Virus record (IMG/VR): IMGVR_UViG_3300010389_000001
Coordinates: 1-64,000 of that record
DNA length: 64,000 nucleotides
Reading direction: 5' to 3' (one strand)
Part shown: positions 27,822 through 53,992 of the stretch, one piece after another
How positions within the stretch are numbered: position 1 is the stretch's first letter
Layout: every line of letters starts with the position of its first letter
Notes under the pieces: model-generated
What the model was told of the DNA's origin: nothing
Database searches by the model: none
The model's input: the letters and a program-made list of their open reading frames with translations, nothing else
Translations under genes and position numbers: made by a program

Positions 27822-29270
27822 ATGAATCCGATTGTCCAGTCTATGATGAATGCCTCCACCACTCTCAACGGTGGGGCAACAAACCTTTCTTCCAACAATC
27901 CCGTTGTTGATTTGTTTTTTCAGATCGGCGCTATGCGCGCGTGGTCGGAAGAGGCTATCATCCAGGCGTTTGAGCGTGCCTTCGCGTACAATCAAGCTCA
28001 AGCTCTAAAGGTTCTTTTCTGGGCGCGTGATATTCGCCAGGGCTCCGGTGAGCGCCGCACTTTCCGGGTTGTCTGCCGGCATCTCGCCCAGAATCATACC
28101 GAACTAATGAACGGCCTTATGCGGCTTATTCCCGAGTATGGCCGATGGGATGATTTGCTTTGCTTCATCAATCCAGAGGCCGAGAAGGCTCCATGTGAGG
28201 AGCAGGCTCTCTTTCTCATTGCTGATGCGCTTTACTCCGGTAACGCCCTGGCCGCGAAGTGGTGCCCGCGTGAACGCTCGTCTAAGCGCGCTCTCGCACG
28301 CAAGATTCGTAAGCATATGAGGCTATGTCCAAGGGAATACCGAAAGCTCCTTAGCTCTACGACTAAGGTTGTTGAGTCGCAGATGTGCGCGGGTGAATGG
28401 GATTCCATTAACTATGGGCATGTGCCTTCGCAGGCTATGTCTATTTATAAGAATGCCTTTGGTCGCCACTCCGAAGAGCGCTGGGCCGAATATCTAAAGG
28501 GACTTGCAAGCGGAACCGAAAAGGTTAATGCTGGAGCCATTTACCCGCATGAGATTATCGGAAAGTATATTTCCCAATATGAAAAGCGTCAGATCCCCGC
28601 TGTTTCGGAAGCTCAGTGGGCTGCTATGCCGAACTGGATGGAGAATAATCCTTACCGGATTCTGCCTGTTGTAGATACTTCTGGGTCAATGTATGGCAGC
28701 TACGCCGAATCCTCTTCCCTAAAGCCCATTCAAGTCTCTGTTGCTCTTGGTCTTTACATTGCTGAGCGTAACGAAGGTCCTTTCAAGGATTGCTTTGTTA
28801 CATTCTCTGAGAATCCGGCAATGCAATATGTGTATGGCGATAACCTAACGGACCGTGTAAATTCGGTATCGTCTGCCGATTGGGGCATGAATACAGATCT
28901 TTACCGCACTTTTGATGCTATCTTGAGCCATGCTCAGCGTGTACGCGCAGCGCATTATGACATGCCAAATGTTGTGCTCATTCTTTCGGATATGGAATTC
29001 GATGTGGGCGTGAGTGTAAACAAGACTGCCATGGAGCAAGCTCGGGAGCTATGGGCTCGTTCGGGCTATGAGTTTCCAAAGATTGTTTTCTGGAACCTCA
29101 ATGCGCGAGGAGGCAATGTTCCGGTTCTCTTCCGCGAAGATGGAACCGCTCTCGTCTCTGGCTTCTCCCCGGCAATTATGAAGTCTCTTCTTTCTGGAGA
29201 GAACTTTACTCCCGAAGGGATTATGCTTCAAACAATTGAGGGAGAGCGATACTCTCAAGTTTCTCTATAA
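27822..29270 (+). CDS. TROVE/Ro60-like protein with vWA domain (DUF2828-like)
   Basis: LFWARDIRQGSGER, EYGRWDDL, AAKWCPR, MIDAS-like VVDTSGSM, ILSDMEFD, IVFWNL, LVSGFSP. Confidence 0.85.
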   Translation: MNPIVQSMMNASTTLNGGATNLSSNNPVVDLFFQIGAMRAWSEEAIIQAFERAFAYNQAQALKVLFWARDIRQGSGERRTFRVVCRHLAQNHTELMNGLMRLIPEYGRWDDLLCFINPEAEKAPCEEQALFLIADALYSGNALAAKWCPRERSSKRALARKIRKHMRLCPREYRKLLSSTTKVVESQMCAGEWDSINYGHVPSQAMSIYKNAFGRHSEERWAEYLKGLASGTEKVNAGAIYPHEIIGKYISQYEKRQIPAVSEAQWAAMPNWMENNPYRILPVVDTSGSMYGSYAESSSLKPIQVSVALGLYIAERNEGPFKDCFVTFSENPAMQYVYGDNLTDRVNSVSSADWGMNTDLYRTFDAILSHAQRVRAAHYDMPNVVLILSDMEFDVGVSVNKTAMEQARELWARSGYEFPKIVFWNLNARGGNVPVLFREDGTALVSGFSPAIMKSLLSGENFTPEGIMLQTIEGERYSQVSL

Positions 29271-29347
29271 AAAGATGCCAAGTCCTCCCGGGTGGCTATA
29301 GGGTTAATTGCACCCATCCACCGCCGGATTTTTCAAAAGGAGTTAAA

Positions 29348-29881
29348 ATGACCGCCGTTGATAATAAAGCTTGGTATGCTGTTCGAGTTCTTTCCGGAAC
29401 CGAGAATAAAGTAAAGTCCGCCATTTCTGTTGCGGCTGGACTAAAGGGTTTGGATAATCTCTTTGATGATATTCTTGTGGTTAATAAGGTCATTAAAACA
29501 TCGAAGAACAAGGAAACTACCGTAAATCTATATCCCGGATATATCTTTGTTAATGCTGACCTCAACAGCGAGGCAAGGCATGTTGTTTCTTCGACGAGAG
29601 GCGTTGTTGGGTTTGTTGGAAACCGAAGGAACCCTCCTCCAATGTCTCAGGCTGAAGTTGCGCGACTTCTAAAGGACGTTGGGATTCCAGATAGCAGCAA
29701 GCCGGCTGTTCCCACTTCTCTTTTCTCCGAAGGAGATTATGTCCGCGTCATTGGAACTGGGCTAGAGGGCCATGTAAAGAGACTTTCTAGCTCTGGAGAA
29801 AAGCTTGTTGTTACAACAAATCTTTTCGATCGCCCCGTGGATACCGAAGTTTCTCCGGACCAGATTCAGAAGATTTCATAG
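29348..29881 (+). CDS. nusG: Transcription elongation/antitermination factor NusG
   Basis: WYAVRVLSGTENKV, LYPGYIFV, GVVGFVG, C-terminal KOW. Confidence 0.9.
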   Translation: MTAVDNKAWYAVRVLSGTENKVKSAISVAAGLKGLDNLFDDILVVNKVIKTSKNKETTVNLYPGYIFVNADLNSEARHVVSSTRGVVGFVGNRRNPPPMSQAEVARLLKDVGIPDSSKPAVPTSLFSEGDYVRVIGTGLEGHVKRLSSSGEKLVVTTNLFDRPVDTEVSPDQIQKIS

Positions 29882-30047: not shown

Positions 30048-30633
30048 CTCCCCTCACTCAAGCGTACCTATCTCTATTAGCAAACTGGCTGGAGATTAAT
30101 TACCTTCTGCAAGGTTCGAATCCTCGCTGTGAAAAAGATAGGTTGAGGCTATAATATTTAAGACTATAAAATGGAAAAGTAAGGTGAGCCTGGGAAGGCT
30201 CTATCCAGCCTGAAAAATGCCATACAAATGGTCGCCTTTTAGATTATAGAAAAGCGTATGCTCACCACCAACATAGGGTCCGGACTACAGAGAGTGGCTT
30301 TCTCATAAGCCACTCTCTGTAAGACACCCGTGAGCGGGTCGCGCTAATGATGTTGGAAACTAGAGGGAAGTAGGGACTTCGTGCGCCCGAATAACAATAG
30401 ACGTTACTGCCTCGCTTAAATCCAGTACCTCTTATGGTGAAACAATCGGTTCCAGCTATAGCTGGCGTGAAATCTGGAGAGCGGTTATTGATCTTGGGAC
30501 CGCACCCCGCTGGCACACCGGGTAAAGTGTGCCAACCCAAAAATATGATAGTCATTCCTATTTTTTTGCGTATAATGTTTTTGCATTAATCTTGATGCCC
30601 CTTAGCTCAGCTTTGGTTAGAGCAGCGGACTGT

Positions 30634-31477
30634 CGCGAAAATGGCAGCTTTAAGGAGAAACTCTTAAAGAAAACCAATCAAATTCGGGGAACCCTTTAAA
30701 ATGGCAATCCCGAGCCAAGCCTCAAAAGAGGAAGGTGTAGAGACTATTTTCTAAATAATTAAAACCTCATCTAGAATGAAGGAAGGAACAATGACAACTA
30801 AACGAGCAAAAAGTCTTTTGTTAGCTATGTCTATCGGTGATGGGTCTGTCCGTAAAGATAGACCAGAGCTTCAAATTGGGCATAGTATAAAGCAAAAAGA
30901 TTTTTGTGAAGAAAAAGCAAAATTGCTTGGAGAATGTTTGGAGCGAAACATTAATACCCGCATAAAAACATATGGCGGATATGATTGTATTCGGTTTAGC
31001 GTTACTCATCCATATTTGAAATTTGTTAGAAAGTGGTTATATAAAAATAATCAAAAAACTCTTAACATTAAAGTGTTGAGAAGACTAACAGATGAAGCAA
31101 TTGCTATTTGGTATATGGACGATGGAAGTCTTTATACTAAAAAAAGAAATGGAATACCTCACGCATTTGAGCTTGTTATTTCAACTTGCTGTCCTACAGT
31201 AGAAGAAGCGCAAACAATTTGTGACTTCTTTTATGAAAGATATGAAGTTAAAATGACGATCAAGAAAATGAAAGGAAGATTTTCCGTTCGCTGTGGAACG
31301 CAAAATGCTCGTAAGTTGATACCTATTCTAGAACCTTATTGTATGTCTGGAATGGAATATAAGTTCAAACCAATTTTAGAAAACTAGACGGTTGGCACCT
31401 AAACAGATAAAGCTGTAGGTGATGGGATAGTCCAGACCACAAACAATTTAATTGGCAGTGAAAACTGTAGTGGTAAG
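30634..31477 (+). mobile_element. Group I intron
   Basis: P1 CTGTC/GGCAG with a U.G pair at the 5' splice site; core AAATTCGGGGAA, GGCAATCCCGAGCC, GAGACT...ATAGTCC; terminal G. Confidence 0.85.
30776..31387 (+). CDS. Intron-encoded LAGLIDADG homing endonuclease (two motifs)
   Basis: LLAMSIGDGSV and IAIWYMDDGSL. Confidence 0.88.
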   Translation: MKEGTMTTKRAKSLLLAMSIGDGSVRKDRPELQIGHSIKQKDFCEEKAKLLGECLERNINTRIKTYGGYDCIRFSVTHPYLKFVRKWLYKNNQKTLNIKVLRRLTDEAIAIWYMDDGSLYTKKRNGIPHAFELVISTCCPTVEEAQTICDFFYERYEVKMTIKKMKGRFSVRCGTQNARKLIPILEPYCMSGMEYKFKPILEN

Positions 31478-32076
31478 TAATCCGCGTGTCCTCGGTTCGA
31501 GTCCGAGAGGGGCAGCCATCTATTTAGCGGGCTTACTCAGAGAGGAACAAAATGTATGTTGTCGATATTTGGGACTCGAAGAACCGAGCCGAAGCCGGCC
31601 CGCACTGGGTTACCGGAAAAGATCTAAGTTTGAAGGAAGCGCTTAATAAAGCAAAGAAGTGGGTTGAGGAATCTGATACCCCGGCTATTTATGAGGTTAT
31701 GTACCGAATTGTTGGATGCCTCTAGGAGAAGTTTTGAGTGAAGAACCTCCCACTTATTGGGAATCTTTAATTGCCGGACTAACAATGACCAAGGAAGATT
31801 GGAAGGCCATTCGAAGTTTGGTGCTAATTATTTTATTTGTTTTAACAATGATTTTCTTTGTTTAAATGATTGGAGGCTTAAATGGGTCTTGACTTTTTTC
31901 AGACTAGAATGGGGCTCACTCTATTTGAGCGAGACGTTCCAGAATTCCTAAGGTTGCTAGAAAGAATTGCCGACGAGCTTAAGCGCAGCAATGATCTAAA
32001 GGAAGAGGGGATGGAAACTGGAACCAAGCGTTCCTTTCGCGGAACCCTTACTGGCGTTGATTATTAACAAAGCTTT

Positions 32077-32149
32077 CTGGACGTAGAACAGGGGATGATT
32101 CGCCGCTTTTGGGAAGCGGAGCACGCAAGTTCGATTCTTGCCGTTCAGA
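32077..32149 (+). tRNA. tRNA-Pro (UGG)
   Basis: CTGGACG/CGTTCAG acceptor; CCGCT-TTTGGGA-AGCGG; GTTCGATTC. Confidence 0.8.
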
Positions 32150-32378
32150 TCATTCTATTGATAGGTTGCTTTATGACCAATCTTTTAAAAGAAACTTTAT
32201 TCTTATCCGATGGCGATACAATTAAGTATAAGCCAACGGGACAGATTGGTATTATAATAAGAGAGCATAATCCTGGCGACTCTGCCGAATCTAGCTATGA
32301 GCTAAAGTTATTGGATCCAGACAAAAAGATTTGGGCTTCCGAGTGCGATATTGAGCTTTTATTTGCCGTGGGCTGATT

Positions 32379-32912
32379 ATGCTAACCTTAGATTCCTTAA
32401 ATCCAGATAAGCCTCTCTCTGTTTTTCTTGCAATTGGCTTTGCAGAGAAAGCCTTCCCGGTTTGGGAAAAAGAATATCCTGAGGATATGAGGCCGAGAAG
32501 GGCAATCGAAGCAGCTAAGGAGTGGCTAAAGAATCCCTCTGCTGCTGCTGCTAATGATGCTCGTGCTGCTTCTGCTGCTTCTGCTGCTTCTGCTTCTGCT
32601 GCTGATGCTGCTGATGCTGCTAATGCTGCTTATGATGCTGCTGCTTATGCTGCTTATGCTGCTGATGCTGCTGCTTATGCTGCTGCTTCTGCTGCTTCTG
32701 CTGCTAATGCTGCTTATGCTGCTGCTTATGCTGCTGCTTTAGTAGTAGATAAAGAAATCTTAATCCACGAAGTAATCTTAGAAAACCTAGACTGGATTCT
32801 GCAATATAAAATAGAGAATGAACAAAGCTTTGCTCAACCAGAGTTGGTCTTTGATTACTTAACCGAAGAACAAAAGCAGAGTTTTCTGTTTAATTTAGAT
32901 GCGGTGGCCTAA
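32379..32912 (+). CDS. Imm5-like protein with Ala-rich repeat, paralog 1
   Basis: WEKEYPEDMRPRRAIEAAKEW, (GCT)n-rich tract, C-terminal FLFNLD. Confidence 0.7.
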   Translation: MLTLDSLNPDKPLSVFLAIGFAEKAFPVWEKEYPEDMRPRRAIEAAKEWLKNPSAAAANDARAASAASAASASAADAADAANAAYDAAAYAAYAADAAAYAAASAASAANAAYAAAYAAALVVDKEILIHEVILENLDWILQYKIENEQSFAQPELVFDYLTEEQKQSFLFNLDAVA

Positions 32913-46230: not shown

Positions 46231-46307
46231 GCGGAAGTATCCCCTCGGCCTCCTAAGCTGTTGAAAGGGTAACTGGACACATGCGGGTTCGACTCCCGCC
46301 TTCCGCA
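46231..46307 (+). tRNA. Non-canonical tRNA-Arg(CCU)-like RNA lacking a D arm
   Basis: Perfect GCGGAAG/CTTCCGC acceptor, GCGGG-TTCGACT-CCCGC T arm, CGGC-CTCCTAA-GCTG arm; only ~8 nt between acceptor and anticodon arm. Confidence 0.6.
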
Positions 46308-52649: not shown

Positions 52650-53026
52650 GGGGGTGAATAGGTTTCGACGTGGCAATGAGCCTGGATAGTGCAAGCGGTC
52701 TGCGGCAACAAAAGACCTAAATAGTGTTGCAAAACTAATAATTGCCAACAACAATTATCACTACAACTCTGTCGCTCTAGCGGCTTAGTCGTCGGGGCTT
52801 CTAGTCGCCTTGTAACCAAAGGCTAGATAACAGGTAGATCCCTGCGAAAATAAAAAATCAAAATGGCTACCCTCGTTGTATGAGGTGGAGCGCAATAGGG
52901 CAGTGAGCGCTGGTTGGAAAATCTGTCTATCTTTGCTGATTTGTGATAGTAAATCGGACAAGCTTGTGAACGACTTGAATGGTTATTTGTTGCGGACGCG
53001 AGTTTCGATTCTCGCCACCTCCACCA
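52650..53026 (+). ncRNA. ssrA: tmRNA; tag peptide ANNNYHYNSVALAA (52744-52788)
   Basis: GGGGGTG...GGTTTCGAC 5' end, G3:U70 acceptor, TTCGATT T-loop, CCA, tag ending in ALAA. Confidence 0.93.
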
Positions 53027-53053
53027 CTTTTCAAAAAAGTTAGAGGAGTAGAG

Positions 53054-53992
53054 ATGATTAGGAAAGAGAAAAATCATGTCATAAACTCTATTGTTAGAAA
53101 TTGCTGCATACCAGCGTGGCTTAAAGACTTGGACCCGATCTTGGCAGGGGGTTCGATTCTTTATTTCTACCTGATGTTTGGGGACGAAAATTCTTTTGCA
53201 TCAAAGAAGGTCATGGCAAAGATCAAGATGGTAGATAGATTCAGCGGCAACAAGGAGATCAGAAAGTATCTTTTGAATAAATCAGATGGCATTACCGATT
53301 ACCCTGGCGATGTTGACGTTTGGTTTGCTTCAGAAGAAGCTCTGGCTTCAGCGATGGCTTCTGTTCCTTCCTCAAATGCAATAAAAACATCGAATTGGGC
53401 AAATACCTTTCTCTTGAGAAATAGAGTCTTCCCAAGAATGAGGTCCCTGCAGGTTGTGAAGAAGGTTCAAGAATCCCCAGAGTCTCTCATCGAAAGCTTT
53501 GATCTTGCTAACTGCATGATTGCCTGGAGGGATGACACTCTTTATATTGATGATAGGCTGGATGCGGCGTTTGCTTCCGGTGCCCTTGAGTACGTAAACA
53601 ACCCATATGAAGGCGATTTGACATTTGCCTCAAAGCTATACAATGCTCTGAGGTTATTTAAGTATGCGGATAGGTATTCTTTATCTTTTTCAGATGAAAT
53701 TCACTCTATCATACTTAGTCTATTCCTAGAGGCGGACGATGCTGACTTAAAAGAATATGCCGAGAAAACCAGCTTTCAGAATATCCATTATGGAAAGGTG
53801 TATGCTTCGGAAAATACGGTAAGATCCATGATGCAAAACTTGGCATATAGCATCTCGATCTGGTATGGTATGGAAAATTTCAGAGAAGAAAACCTGGCCT
53901 TCCTCATAGGCCTTAAGTCTAAGGAGCTTTTGGTGACCCAGGAATTCGTTAAATCAGCCTTCGGAGAAGGCGCTAGATCACCTGGATGGTAA
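53054..53992 (+). CDS. Nucleotidyltransferase-like protein (PolA/CCA head-like)
   Basis: LAGGSI, DVDVWF, FDLANC, RLFKY. Confidence 0.6.
   Translation: MIRKEKNHVINSIVRNCCIPAWLKDLDPILAGGSILYFYLMFGDENSFASKKVMAKIKMVDRFSGNKEIRKYLLNKSDGITDYPGDVDVWFASEEALASAMASVPSSNAIKTSNWANTFLLRNRVFPRMRSLQVVKKVQESPESLIESFDLANCMIAWRDDTLYIDDRLDAAFASGALEYVNNPYEGDLTFASKLYNALRLFKYADRYSLSFSDEIHSIILSLFLEADDADLKEYAEKTSFQNIHYGKVYASENTVRSMMQNLAYSISIWYGMENFREENLAFLIGLKSKELLVTQEFVKSAFGEGARSPGW

What the first reader, a model, noticed from the sequence alone, without database searches (positions are those of the whole stretch)
30596..31518. tRNA-Asn(GUU) interrupted within the anticodon by a group I intron encoding a LAGLIDADG endonuclease
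Seen: splice sites fall between anticodon positions 35 and 36 (GT|T). The ORF is looped out by a TTTTCTAAA/TTTAGAAAA stem next to P7. Known: classic bacterial tRNA group I introns are in Leu, fMet, Ile and Arg tRNAs, and phage introns mostly carry GIY-YIG or HNH. An Asn site with LAGLIDADG in a phage is uncommon and missed by standard tRNA scans.
Basis: partly seen in the sequence, partly recalled or inferred. Interest (0 to 1): 0.6.

Follow-up and report, generated by a model that had tools for sequence, protein, structure and literature searches.

The report
Phage tRNA-Asn split by mobile intron
A large phage genome carries its only asparagine tRNA gene split inside the anticodon by a self-splicing-type (group I) intron that holds a homing-endonuclease gene. 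The mechanism is ordinary, but the tRNA, the site and the viral setting do not appear in the literature I could search.

Summary
ARAGORN in intron mode calls tRNA-Asn(GUU) at 30596-31518, with an 844-nt intron (30634-31477) between anticodon positions 35 and 36.

- **Splice sites:** exon 1 ends in U, paired to G in a P1 helix (CUGU|C with GGCAG). The intron ends in G.
- **Ribozyme:** Rfam's group I model hits the 5' half at 40.6 bits, below its cut-off of 50 because a 640-nt ORF module splits the ribozyme.
- **ORF-less twin:** metagenome contig L490 carries the same tRNA-Asn and intron without the module. It differs at 2 loop bases, is 204 nt long and scores 68.6 bits.
- **ORF module:** it occupies 30747-31386, between the P7 5' strand and the P3 3' strand. 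A 9-bp stem closes it and ACTA flanks it on both sides.
- **Protein:** it encodes an intact I-SceI-like LAGLIDADG protein (Pfam E 1.5e-23; model pLDDT 96; TM-score 0.77 to I-SceI and I-WcaI).
- **Family:** related introns occur in more than 100 IMG/VR viral contigs. They sit after a U at anticodon-loop positions 33/34, 34/35 or 35/36 of tRNA-Leu, CAU, Arg, Lys and Asn genes. Five other viral contigs carry the Asn site.

Splicing and cleavage are inferred, not shown. I rate it a new variant of a known kind, of moderate interest.

The parts
30549..30576 (+). Promoter-like site (TAGTCA, 16-nt spacer, TATAAT) about 20 nt upstream of the tRNA 5' end
   Evidence: Consensus scan, 10 of 12 matches. 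This is a pattern match only.
30596..30633 (+). tRNA-Asn exon 1: acceptor 5' strand, D arm, anticodon-stem 5' strand GCGGA (30625-30629), and loop C32 U33 G34 U35
   Evidence: ARAGORN intron mode. L490 exon 1 aligns with it; the only differences are D-loop changes and one base that keeps the anticodon stem paired.
30634..31477 (+). Group I intron, 844 nt, ending in the terminal G (omega-G) at 31477
30630..30647 (+). P1: exon CUGU plus intron CG (30630-30635) pairs with the internal guide UGGCAG (30642-30647). U30633 pairs with G30644 as the U.G wobble at the 5' splice site.
   Evidence: Direct pairing check. Across the family the guide sequence tracks the exon end: CUGU goes with GCAG, ACUU with GAGU/C, GACU with GGUC, GCCU with GGGC.
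30648..30746 (+). Ribozyme 5' half: P2 (30648-30669), P3 5' strand (30674-30679), P4 (30684-30689 with 30708-30713), P5, P6/P6a (30714-30736), and P7 5' strand G30740 plus GACUA 30742-30746 with A30741 bulged
   Evidence: Rfam alignment, pairing check, family covariation
30747..31386 (+). 640-nt ORF module, absent from allele L490. ACTA lies on both sides (30743-30746 and 31383-31386), so the boundary is ambiguous by 4 nt.
   Evidence: Alignment A2 of both window pieces to L490. A contig in run X5 has a joint from 30742 to 31383.
30747..30755 (+). 5' arm of the 9-bp stem (UUUUCUAAA) that closes the ORF loop. Its partner is 31375-31383 (UUUAGAAAA), which also encodes the last residues of the ORF.
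   Evidence: Homologous ORFs in L006, L008, L011 and L013 are closed by stems of different sequence at the same place.
30791..31387 (+). LAGLIDADG homing-endonuclease gene, 198 aa (203 aa if read from the ATG at 30776). A Shine-Dalgarno-like AAGGAAGG lies at 30779-30786. The stop codon UAG (31385-31387) overlaps the core sequence CUAGAC.
   Evidence: Pfam PF03161 E 1.5e-23; PHROG 11023; I-SceI sequence hit; AlphaFold2 model pLDDT 96.1; Foldseek I-WcaI and I-SceI TM-score 0.77; GD and IAIWYMDDG motifs invariant in 20 homologues
31387..31477 (+). Ribozyme 3' half: P3 3' strand GGUUGG (31390-31395), P8/P8a (31396-31421), P7 3' strand UAGUCC (31428-31433), P9.0 (31436-31440 with 31470-31474), P9a, P9b with a GAAA loop (31455-31468), omega-G 31477
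31478..31518 (+). tRNA-Asn exon 2: U36 A37 A38, anticodon-stem 3' strand UCCGC (31481-31485), T arm, acceptor 3' strand, discriminator G31515, encoded CCA
   Evidence: ARAGORN. The best full-length matches of exon 2 alone in GenBank phages are annotated tRNA-Asn genes.

Best explanation
The phage's only tRNA-Asn(GUU) gene is transcribed as a precursor of about 920 nt.

**Splicing (inferred)**
1. The intron folds into a compact group I ribozyme (P1 to P9). The 640-nt ORF module is held out of the core by a 9-bp stem between P7 and P3.
2. An external guanosine attacks after U35, which is the U.G wobble in P1.
3. The terminal G31477 then docks, and the exons are ligated. They are held together by the anticodon stem.
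4. This restores the loop CUGUUAA and a working tRNA-Asn.

**Mobility (inferred)**
- The intron RNA also serves as mRNA for a monomeric, I-SceI-like, two-motif LAGLIDADG endonuclease.
- During co-infection the enzyme most likely cuts related phage DNA that lacks the element, and repair copies the element in (homing).
- The ORF module is a separable unit. A nearly identical intron exists without it, so the endonuclease gene was gained by, or lost from, an intron already resident in tRNA-Asn.

**Shown versus inferred**
- Shown: the sequences, the pairings, family covariation, the protein fold and the ORF-less allele.
- Inferred: actual splicing, translation, cleavage and the enzyme's target.
For: **tRNA**
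- Cloverleaf with anticodon GUU, 7-bp acceptor stem, discriminator G and CCA.
- Exon 2 alone best matches annotated phage tRNA-Asn genes.
- No other tRNA-Asn was found in the 232.5-kb record.

**Ribozyme**
- RF00028 scores 40.6 bits, E 1e-8, on the interrupted copy.
- It scores 68.6 bits (cut-off 50), E 5e-17, on the ORF-less allele L490. L490 differs from the window's ribozyme at 2 loop bases.
- All helices pair in the window.
- On 35 ORF-less family members, 82.8% of cells pair against 67.7% when shuffled. The covariation score is 0.414 against 0.154 shuffled (0 of 500 shuffles reach it) and at most 0.131 when partners are slid.
- P3 has compensatory changes at all 6 pairs. P4 is 100% paired.
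- The internal guide covaries with the exon end across host tRNAs.
- MFE folding of L490 gives z = -3.7 and recovers the tRNA arms plus P2, P3, P4, P6a, P8 and P9b.

**Endonuclease**
- Pfam, PHROG, PDB sequence and fold matches.
- The protein is full length, and every family-invariant residue is present, including the acidic residues of both motifs.

**Independent assemblies**
- Contigs of run X1 cross both ends of the ORF module at about 99% identity.
Against: - There is no experimental or read-level evidence of splicing. The only RNA-library contig (run X15, 31228-31437, identical to the window) lies inside the intron and could be DNA carry-over.
- The window's own intron is below Rfam's curated cut-off, which the insertion explains.
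- P5 is only 2 bp plus a mismatch.
- No convincing P10 pairing exists. The anticodon stem is assumed to replace it, as reported for the Anabaena tRNA-Leu intron (my recollection of Zaug et al. 1993, which is in the reference list of PMC3984707).
- An alternative 12-bp extension of the ORF stem (CUAUUUUCUAAA with UUUAGAAAA-C-UAG) would compete with P7.
- The ORF's last codons and stop lie in the closing stem and core, so translation and folding may interfere with each other.
- No intronless tRNA-Asn allele from a close relative was found, so the homing site is unknown.
Confidence: 0.85

Rival explanations
1. The endonuclease does not home to an intronless tRNA-Asn gene. Instead it targets the conserved ribozyme DNA at the P7/J7-3 junction of ORF-less introns. 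It would then spread from intron to intron, whatever the host gene, rather than moving the whole intron.
For: - The window and L490 share an almost identical intron and differ by presence or absence of the ORF module alone.
- All eight homologues whose flanks were examined (L006 and seven of L007-L015; 33-46% identity to the window's protein) sit at the same spot, directly after the P7 5' strand. Their hosts include tRNA-Leu, and for most the host gene was not identified.
- The flanking core DNA is invariant across the family.
- The module is flanked by a 4-nt repeat, ACTA. From general knowledge, LAGLIDADG enzymes leave 4-nt 3' overhangs.
Against: - Presence versus absence is equally explained by precise loss through the 4-nt repeat, or by the usual gain, decay and loss cycle of homing endonuclease genes.
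- A shared position can reflect common descent of intron plus ORF.
- The ORF insertion site and the exon junction share only GACT (my comparison), so there is no Loizos-type resemblance.
- L006 shows no clean duplication.
Confidence: 0.2
2. The LAGLIDADG protein is mainly a maturase (splicing helper) or an inactive remnant, not an active homing endonuclease.
For: LAGLIDADG maturases and bifunctional enzymes exist; bI3 and I-AniI appear among the fold matches. The ORF splits the catalytic core, where a protein clamp could help folding.
Against: - Both catalytic acidic residues and all family-invariant positions are kept.
- The closest folds are pure endonucleases, I-WcaI and I-SceI.
- The ORF-less allele keeps an identical ribozyme, which argues that no protein is needed.
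Confidence: 0.1
3. The gene is a dead tRNA: the intron no longer splices and the locus is decaying.
For: There is no direct evidence of splicing. P5 is short. The copy scores below Rfam's cut-off.
Against: - All core helices are intact.
- There are only 2 loop differences from an allele in another metagenome.
- tRNA stem changes between the two alleles keep pairing.
- The ORF is intact.
- It is the only tRNA-Asn found in the record.
Confidence: 0.05
4. The ORF insertion is an assembly chimera.
For: The source is a single metagenomic contig.
Against: Logan contigs of run X1 span both insertion junctions (30732-31063 and 31082-31525) with 4 to 5 differences. However, X1 may be the source sample or one near it.
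Confidence: 0.02

Closest known systems
Bacterial tRNA group I introns: cyanobacterial and plastid tRNA-Leu(UAA), Azoarcus tRNA-Ile(CAU), Agrobacterium tRNA-Arg(CCU), Beggiatoa/Thiomargarita tRNA-Arg(UCU)
   Same: - A small group I ribozyme in the anticodon loop, inserted after a U.
- P1 is built from the anticodon loop and stem, and the anticodon stem holds the exons together.
- From memory, the core run GGUGUAGAGACUAGACGG is the same as in the Azoarcus intron.
- Family members in viral contigs use the classic Leu 34/35 site.
   Different: - The host is tRNA-Asn(GUU) and the site is 35/36. Neither appears in the papers I could search.
- The genome is viral.
- The intron carries an ORF.
Synechocystis tRNA-fMet intron encoding I-Ssp6803I (Bonocora and Shub 2001, cited in PMC3984707)
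   Same: [quoted passage not shown]
   Different: From memory, that enzyme is of the PD-(D/E)XK type. Here it is LAGLIDADG, the host is a phage, and the ORF sits between P7 and P3.
I-SceI and I-WcaI (monomeric two-motif LAGLIDADG enzymes of fungal mitochondrial rRNA introns)
   Same: Pfam LAGLIDADG_2; the best fold matches (TM-score 0.77); two motifs, each with an acidic residue.
   Different: Only about 17% identity; 198 aa against 235; encoded in a phage tRNA intron.
Phage group I introns such as T4 td, nrdB and nrdD, and those of SPO1, Twort and Bastillevirinae
   Same: Self-splicing introns with homing-endonuclease ORFs looped out of the ribozyme; spread by co-infection.
   Different: Those interrupt protein-coding genes and mostly carry GIY-YIG or HNH enzymes (PMC3984707, PMC11878797). 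This one interrupts a tRNA gene.
Endonuclease-gene invasion of introns (Loizos et al. 1994; Bonocora and Shub 2009; both from memory)
   Same: A natural pair of near-identical introns, one with and one without the endonuclease ORF (window versus L490).
   Different: No resemblance was found between the ORF insertion site and the exon junction. The direction of the event (gain or loss) is unknown.

Membership tests
Group I intron (Rfam RF00028) | Score at or above the curated cut-off of 50 bits | tested here: inconclusive
   The window copy scores 40.6 bits because 640 nt split the core. The ORF-less allele, with the same ribozyme, scores 68.6 bits.
Group I intron | U at the end of the 5' exon, paired to G in P1 with an internal guide sequence | tested here: met
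   U30633 pairs with G30644. P1 is 6 bp. The guide covaries with the exon end across the family.
Group I intron | Terminal G (omega-G) at the 3' splice site | tested here: met
   G31477 precedes exon 2. G is invariant at this column in 35 relatives.
Group I intron | Conserved core P3-P8, with P7 forming a pseudoknot, supported by covariation | tested here: met
   P3, P4, P6, P6a and P8 covary; P7 is invariant and fully paired. All helices pair in the window.
Group I intron | Self-splicing with a guanosine cofactor | not testable with these tools
   No junction-spanning RNA reads were available.
Subgroup IC3 (Azoarcus/Anabaena type) | Compact core without P5abc or a P2.1 extension, as defined by Michel and Westhof | not tested
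   The resemblance to the Azoarcus core sequence is from memory. No subgroup-specific model is on hand.
LAGLIDADG homing endonuclease | Pfam LAGLIDADG_2 above its cut-off | tested here: met
   84 bits against a cut-off of 25.
LAGLIDADG homing endonuclease | Two LAGLIDADG helices, each ending in a catalytic acidic residue, within two alpha-beta-beta-alpha-beta-beta-alpha halves | tested here: met
   Motifs LAMSIGDG and IAIWYMDDG. Model secondary structure and fold matches.
LAGLIDADG homing endonuclease | Site-specific double-strand cleavage and homing | not testable with these tools
tRNA-Asn | Cloverleaf with anticodon GUU once the intron is removed | tested here: met
   ARAGORN intron mode on the unjoined DNA. 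The spliced sequence itself was not built or searched.
tRNA-Asn | Bacterial Asn identity elements: G34 U35 U36 and discriminator G73 (from memory) | tested here: met
   G30632, U30633, U31478 and discriminator G31515. All five other Asn alleles whose 3' ends were printed have G before the encoded or expected CCA.

The most novel reading that the evidence does not exclude
This LAGLIDADG lineage may recognise the invariant P7/J7-3 DNA of the ribozyme itself. It would insert at its own 4-nt staggered cut, leaving the ACTA repeat, and so hop between ORF-less introns in unrelated tRNA and protein genes. If so, the large and so far undescribed population of group I introns in phage tRNA genes would be a shared landing pad for endonuclease genes. 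The window/L490 pair would be a before-and-after snapshot of one such event.
Probability: 0.15. Interest if true: 0.75.

Novelty: new variant of a known kind. Interest (0 to 1): 0.55.

Why it matters
- **A gap in the record.** A 2014 review (PMC3984707) states that all phage introns then known lie in protein-coding genes, despite the many phage tRNA genes. This locus and its relatives show that phage tRNA genes are a frequent home for group I introns. Hosts include Leu, CAU, Arg, Lys and Asn tRNAs.
- **Undercounted tRNAs.** Standard tRNA finders skip these genes, so phage tRNA repertoires are undercounted. Here the only tRNA-Asn in the record would be missed. In cultured Klebsiella jumbo phages a tRNA(CAU) is unannotated.
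- **Wider site range.** The Asn site at 35/36 widens the known range of insertion sites. It also shows how the internal guide sequence adapts to each anticodon.
- **A testable pair.** The ORF-plus and ORF-minus alleles form a clean natural system for testing how endonuclease genes enter or leave introns.
- **A new specificity.** A compact 198-aa I-SceI-like enzyme with a new target may interest meganuclease engineers.

Tried and rejected
- **Close relatives of the phage.** Megablast of 24 kb against GenBank phages gave no match. The NusG-like neighbour found no relatives in IMG/VR. The DUF2828 neighbour found two distant phages. One has an intronless tRNA-Asn, but it is too different to serve as a homing-site model.
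- **Whole-genome RF00028 search.** It missed the real intron and returned two 11-bit hits, taken as noise.
- **Pattern CGGACTGT..TGGCAG in IMG/VR.** None of the intron-tRNA calls ARAGORN made in those loci was a tRNA-Asn intron, so I took the hits for chance matches.
- **3' junction pattern in bacterial genomes.** The scan was cut at 120 rows. After filtering, four rows kept the core motif: one clear tRNA intron (tRNA-Leu, in a Kuenenia MAG contig) and three with exons unlike a tRNA.
- **Exon 1 matches.** Exon 1 best matches phage tRNA-Met/CAU genes. I considered that the Asn gene was remoulded from a CAU tRNA, but exon 2 matches tRNA-Asn and the data do not decide. The unannotated Aeromonas phage CC2 hit is an ordinary tRNA-Met.
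- **Tree of ribozymes.** Asn-hosted introns fall in three places, but an AU test does not reject a single clade (p 0.355). I make no claim about repeated invasion.
- **Exact protein look-up.** It returned only the source contig.
- **Not used.** The large protein searches were not used, because Pfam and the fold search settled the protein.
- The spliced tRNA was not assembled, searched or folded. The exons were searched separately by reference, and the cloverleaf comes from ARAGORN's intron mode on the unjoined DNA.
Full report
**Where the window lies.** The window is the first 64 kb of an IMG/VR virus record of 232,533 bp (JGI 3300010389, Ga0136549_10000001). CheckV rates it 68% complete. All eight tRNA genes and a tmRNA of the record lie in the window. 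Several large ORFs match PHROG phage families. No close relative exists among GenBank phages.

**The observation.** Default ARAGORN and Rfam's tRNA model find nothing between 30049 and 32075. With introns allowed, ARAGORN reports tRNA-Asn(GUU) at 30596-31518 with an 844-nt intron...ACTGT|...|TAATC.... I ran this on the unjoined sequence.

The boundaries are fixed by the group I rules. Exon 1 ends in U30633 and the intron ends in G31477. The loop then reads CUGU|UAA, which is a split between anticodon positions 35 and 36.

The tRNA has a 7-bp acceptor stem, normal D and T arms, a 5-bp anticodon stem, discriminator G and an encoded CCA. Searched alone by reference, exon 2 best matches annotated phage tRNA-Asn genes over its full length. 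Exon 1 best matches phage tRNA-Met/CAU genes.

The exons were handled one by one.

**The ribozyme.** Rfam RF00028 matches 30623-30866 at 40.6 bits (E 1e-8). That is below the cut-off of 50, and the alignment breaks after P7.

A 22-mer across the 5' splice site found one JGI metagenome contig, L490. L490 carries the same tRNA-Asn and the same intron without the ORF: exon 1 at 907-872, intron at 871-668 (204 nt), exon 2 at 667-627, on the minus strand. This allele scores 68.6 bits (E 5e-17).

The window's two ribozyme pieces align to L490 with two differences, both in hairpin loops (P6a and P8). Both pieces end or begin on the same ACTA.

The ORF module is therefore 640 nt (30747-31386, or equivalently 30743-31382). 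It lies between the P7 5' strand (G30740, GACUA 30742-30746) and the P3 3' strand (GGUUGG 31390-31395).

Every helix I assigned pairs in the window: P1, P2, P3, P4, P5 (2 bp plus a mismatch), P6, P6a, P7, P8, P8a, P9.0, P9a and P9b. MFE folding of L490 recovers the tRNA arms and most helices, with z = -3.7.

**Covariation.** I aligned 35 non-redundant ORF-less members (A3) and counted pairs for my structure:

| Measure | Observed | Control |
|---|---|---|
| Cells paired | 82.8% | 67.7% shuffled |
| Covariation score | 0.414 | 0.154 shuffled (0 of 500 reach it); at most 0.131 slid |
| P3 | compensatory changes at all 6 pairs | |
| P4 | 100% paired | |
| P7 and P9.0 | invariant | |

The alignment is poor in P1, so I tested P1 separately. 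The internal guide tracks the exon end: ACUU with GAGU/C, GACU with GGUC, CUGU with GCAG, GCCU with GGGC. In the window, GGCAG matches CUGU|C.

**The family and its hosts.** I corrected ARAGORN's intron placement using the U...G rule. The unique sequences then fall into these classes:

| Host tRNA | Site | Unique sequences |
|---|---|---|
| Leu(UAA) | 34/35 | 46 |
| Leu(UAA) | 33/34 | 12 |
| CAU | 33/34 | 11 |
| Arg(UCU) | 33/34 or 34/35 | 6 |
| Lys(UUU) | 33/34 | 2 |
| Asn(GUU) | 35/36 | L247, L278, L328, L339, L310, plus L490 and the window |

One further Lys(UUU) intron, at 35/36 (L335), was read by eye and is not in this tally.

All the other Asn introns are ORF-less, at 197-216 nt by ARAGORN's placement.

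In a tree of the ribozymes the Asn introns fall in three places. An AU test does not reject one clade (p 0.355), so I draw no conclusion about repeated invasion.

In the first rows of a bacterial genome scan, only a tRNA-Leu example survived filtering.

Among cultured phages, Klebsiella jumbo phages of the genus Alcyoneusvirus (for example Muenster) have an unannotated tRNA(CAU) with a 231-nt intron at 36/37. It scores 104 bits on RF00028. Related ribozymes split the capsid gene of Pelagibacter phage HTVC120P and lie beside the tape-measure gene of Shewanella phage 1/4.

**The protein.**
- The ORF (ATG 30791, preceded by AAGGAAGG; an upstream ATG lies at 30776) encodes 198 aa.
- It matches LAGLIDADG_2 (E 1.5e-23), PHROG 11023 and I-SceI by sequence.
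- In an alignment with 19 viral homologues, the GD of motif 1 and IAIWYMDDG of motif 2 are invariant, and the protein is full length.
- The AlphaFold2 model is confident (pLDDT 96.1, pTM 0.91) and shows two alpha-beta-beta-alpha-beta-beta-alpha halves.
- Foldseek ranks I-WcaI and I-SceI first, at TM-score 0.77.
- It is the only LAGLIDADG_2 gene in the record.

**Position of the ORF.** The closing stem UUUUCUAAA/UUUAGAAAA is exact, and its 3' arm encodes the last residues. The stop codon UAG overlaps the core sequence CUAGAC.

The nearest homologue (46% identity, L006) lies in a tRNA-Leu(UAA) intron at the same place. Homologues in L007-L015 (33-41% identity to the window's protein) also follow directly on ...ACGACUA or ...GAGACUA, and are closed by stems of unrelated sequence.

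Other ORFs in the tRNA-intron family are HNH or unknown.

**Reads.** Contigs of a lagoon metagenome (X1) cover the ORF form across both insertion junctions at about 99% identity. A marine-sediment contig (X5) joins 30742 to 31383, so it lacks this module; what lies between is not reported. Many other contigs match only the conserved core. An RNA-library contig (X15) equals 31228-31437 exactly. That is not proof of transcription and says nothing about splicing.

**How it most likely works.** Transcription probably starts from the promoter-like site at 30549-30576. The intron then removes itself by the standard two-step guanosine-initiated pathway. The anticodon stem, not a P10 helix, holds the exons. 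This yields tRNA-Asn(GUU).

The LAGLIDADG enzyme, translated from the precursor or the excised intron, cuts element-free alleles in co-infecting relatives, and repair copies the element in. These steps are inferred from the anatomy and from established knowledge of group I introns and LAGLIDADG enzymes.

The window/L490 pair shows that the endonuclease gene is a separable unit. Whether it was gained or lost, and whether the enzyme's target is the exon junction or the ribozyme's own P7/J7-3 DNA, remains open. The 4-nt ACTA repeat and the constant ORF position give the second idea some support, at roughly 15 to 20%.

**Literature.** Nine full-text searches found no report of a tRNA-Asn group I intron or of a group I intron in a phage tRNA gene.
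- PMC3984707 (2014) says all phage introns then known lie in protein-coding genes.
- Known bacterial hosts in the papers I read are fMet and Ile2(CAU) (PMC8450103), and Arg(UCU) and Leu(UAA) (PMC4853749). Arg(CCU) is from memory.
- The library holds open-access papers only, so an earlier description cannot be excluded.

**Verdict.** It is a conventional mechanism in a setting not yet described: a new host tRNA, a new site, a viral genome, and a LAGLIDADG ORF inside the core junction. It belongs to a large, overlooked family of phage tRNA introns. I rate it a new variant of a known kind, with interest 0.55.

Noticed in passing
L001 2500-2810 (Klebsiella phage Muenster MT708547.1, about 302826-303136); the same in phiKp_21, KP13-7 and RCIP0023: An unannotated tRNA(CAU) gene is split at 36/37 by a 231-nt ORF-less group I intron (RF00028, 104 bits). 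Its exon 1 is 92% identical to the window's exon 1. These are cultured phages in which splicing could be tested.
   Followed up: partly
L490:627-907 (minus strand), JGI contig Ga0181579_10177116: An ORF-less allele of the same tRNA-Asn intron. tRNA-Pro(UGG) follows 5 nt downstream, then tRNA-Val. In the window, about 557 nt of small ORFs separate tRNA-Asn from tRNA-Pro (32076-32151).
   Followed up: partly
IMG/VR loci L203-L367: A large family of group I introns sits in viral tRNA genes (Leu UAA, CAU, Arg UCU, Lys UUU, Asn GUU), at 33/34, 34/35 or 35/36 and always after a U. ARAGORN often shifts the intron by 1-3 nt and then misnames the tRNA, for example as 'Tyr(ata)', 'Stop(tta)' or 'SeC'.
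   Followed up: partly
window 52650-53026: A phage-encoded tmRNA (Rfam 110 bits; tag peptide ANNNYHYNSVALAA). A 337-aa ORF (52979-53992) overlaps its 3' end.
   Followed up: no
window 46231-46307 and 32076-32151: The two tRNA finders disagree. Rfam alone calls a weak tRNA at 46231-46307 (30.3 bits, cut-off 29). ARAGORN alone calls tRNA-Pro(UGG) at 32076-32151.
   Followed up: no
window 27822-29881 and 32379-32912: Next to the tRNA cluster lie a DUF2828/DUF7788 protein (482 aa), a NusG-like protein (177 aa) and an alanine-rich Imm5-like protein (177 aa).
   Followed up: no
L016:3001-3567 and L029:3001-3615: LAGLIDADG homologues in gut-type viral contigs have in-frame stops (1 and 7). They are either decaying genes or phages with a reassigned stop codon.
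   Followed up: no
L494 (Pelagibacter phage HTVC120P MH598807.1, 19433-20607): A ribozyme related to this family lies between two CDS that are both annotated 'capsid protein'. The capsid gene is probably split by an unannotated group I intron.
   Followed up: no
L001 2898-2981: The annotated tRNA-Asn of Klebsiella phage Muenster is 84 nt long and has a long extra arm, which is unusual for tRNA-Asn.
   Followed up: no
window 30743-30755 with 31375-31387: The ORF-closing stem could extend to 12 bp (CUAUUUUCUAAA with UUUAGAAAA-C-UAG, one bulged C). It would use the CUA of P7, giving a possible alternative fold that competes with the catalytic core.
   Followed up: no
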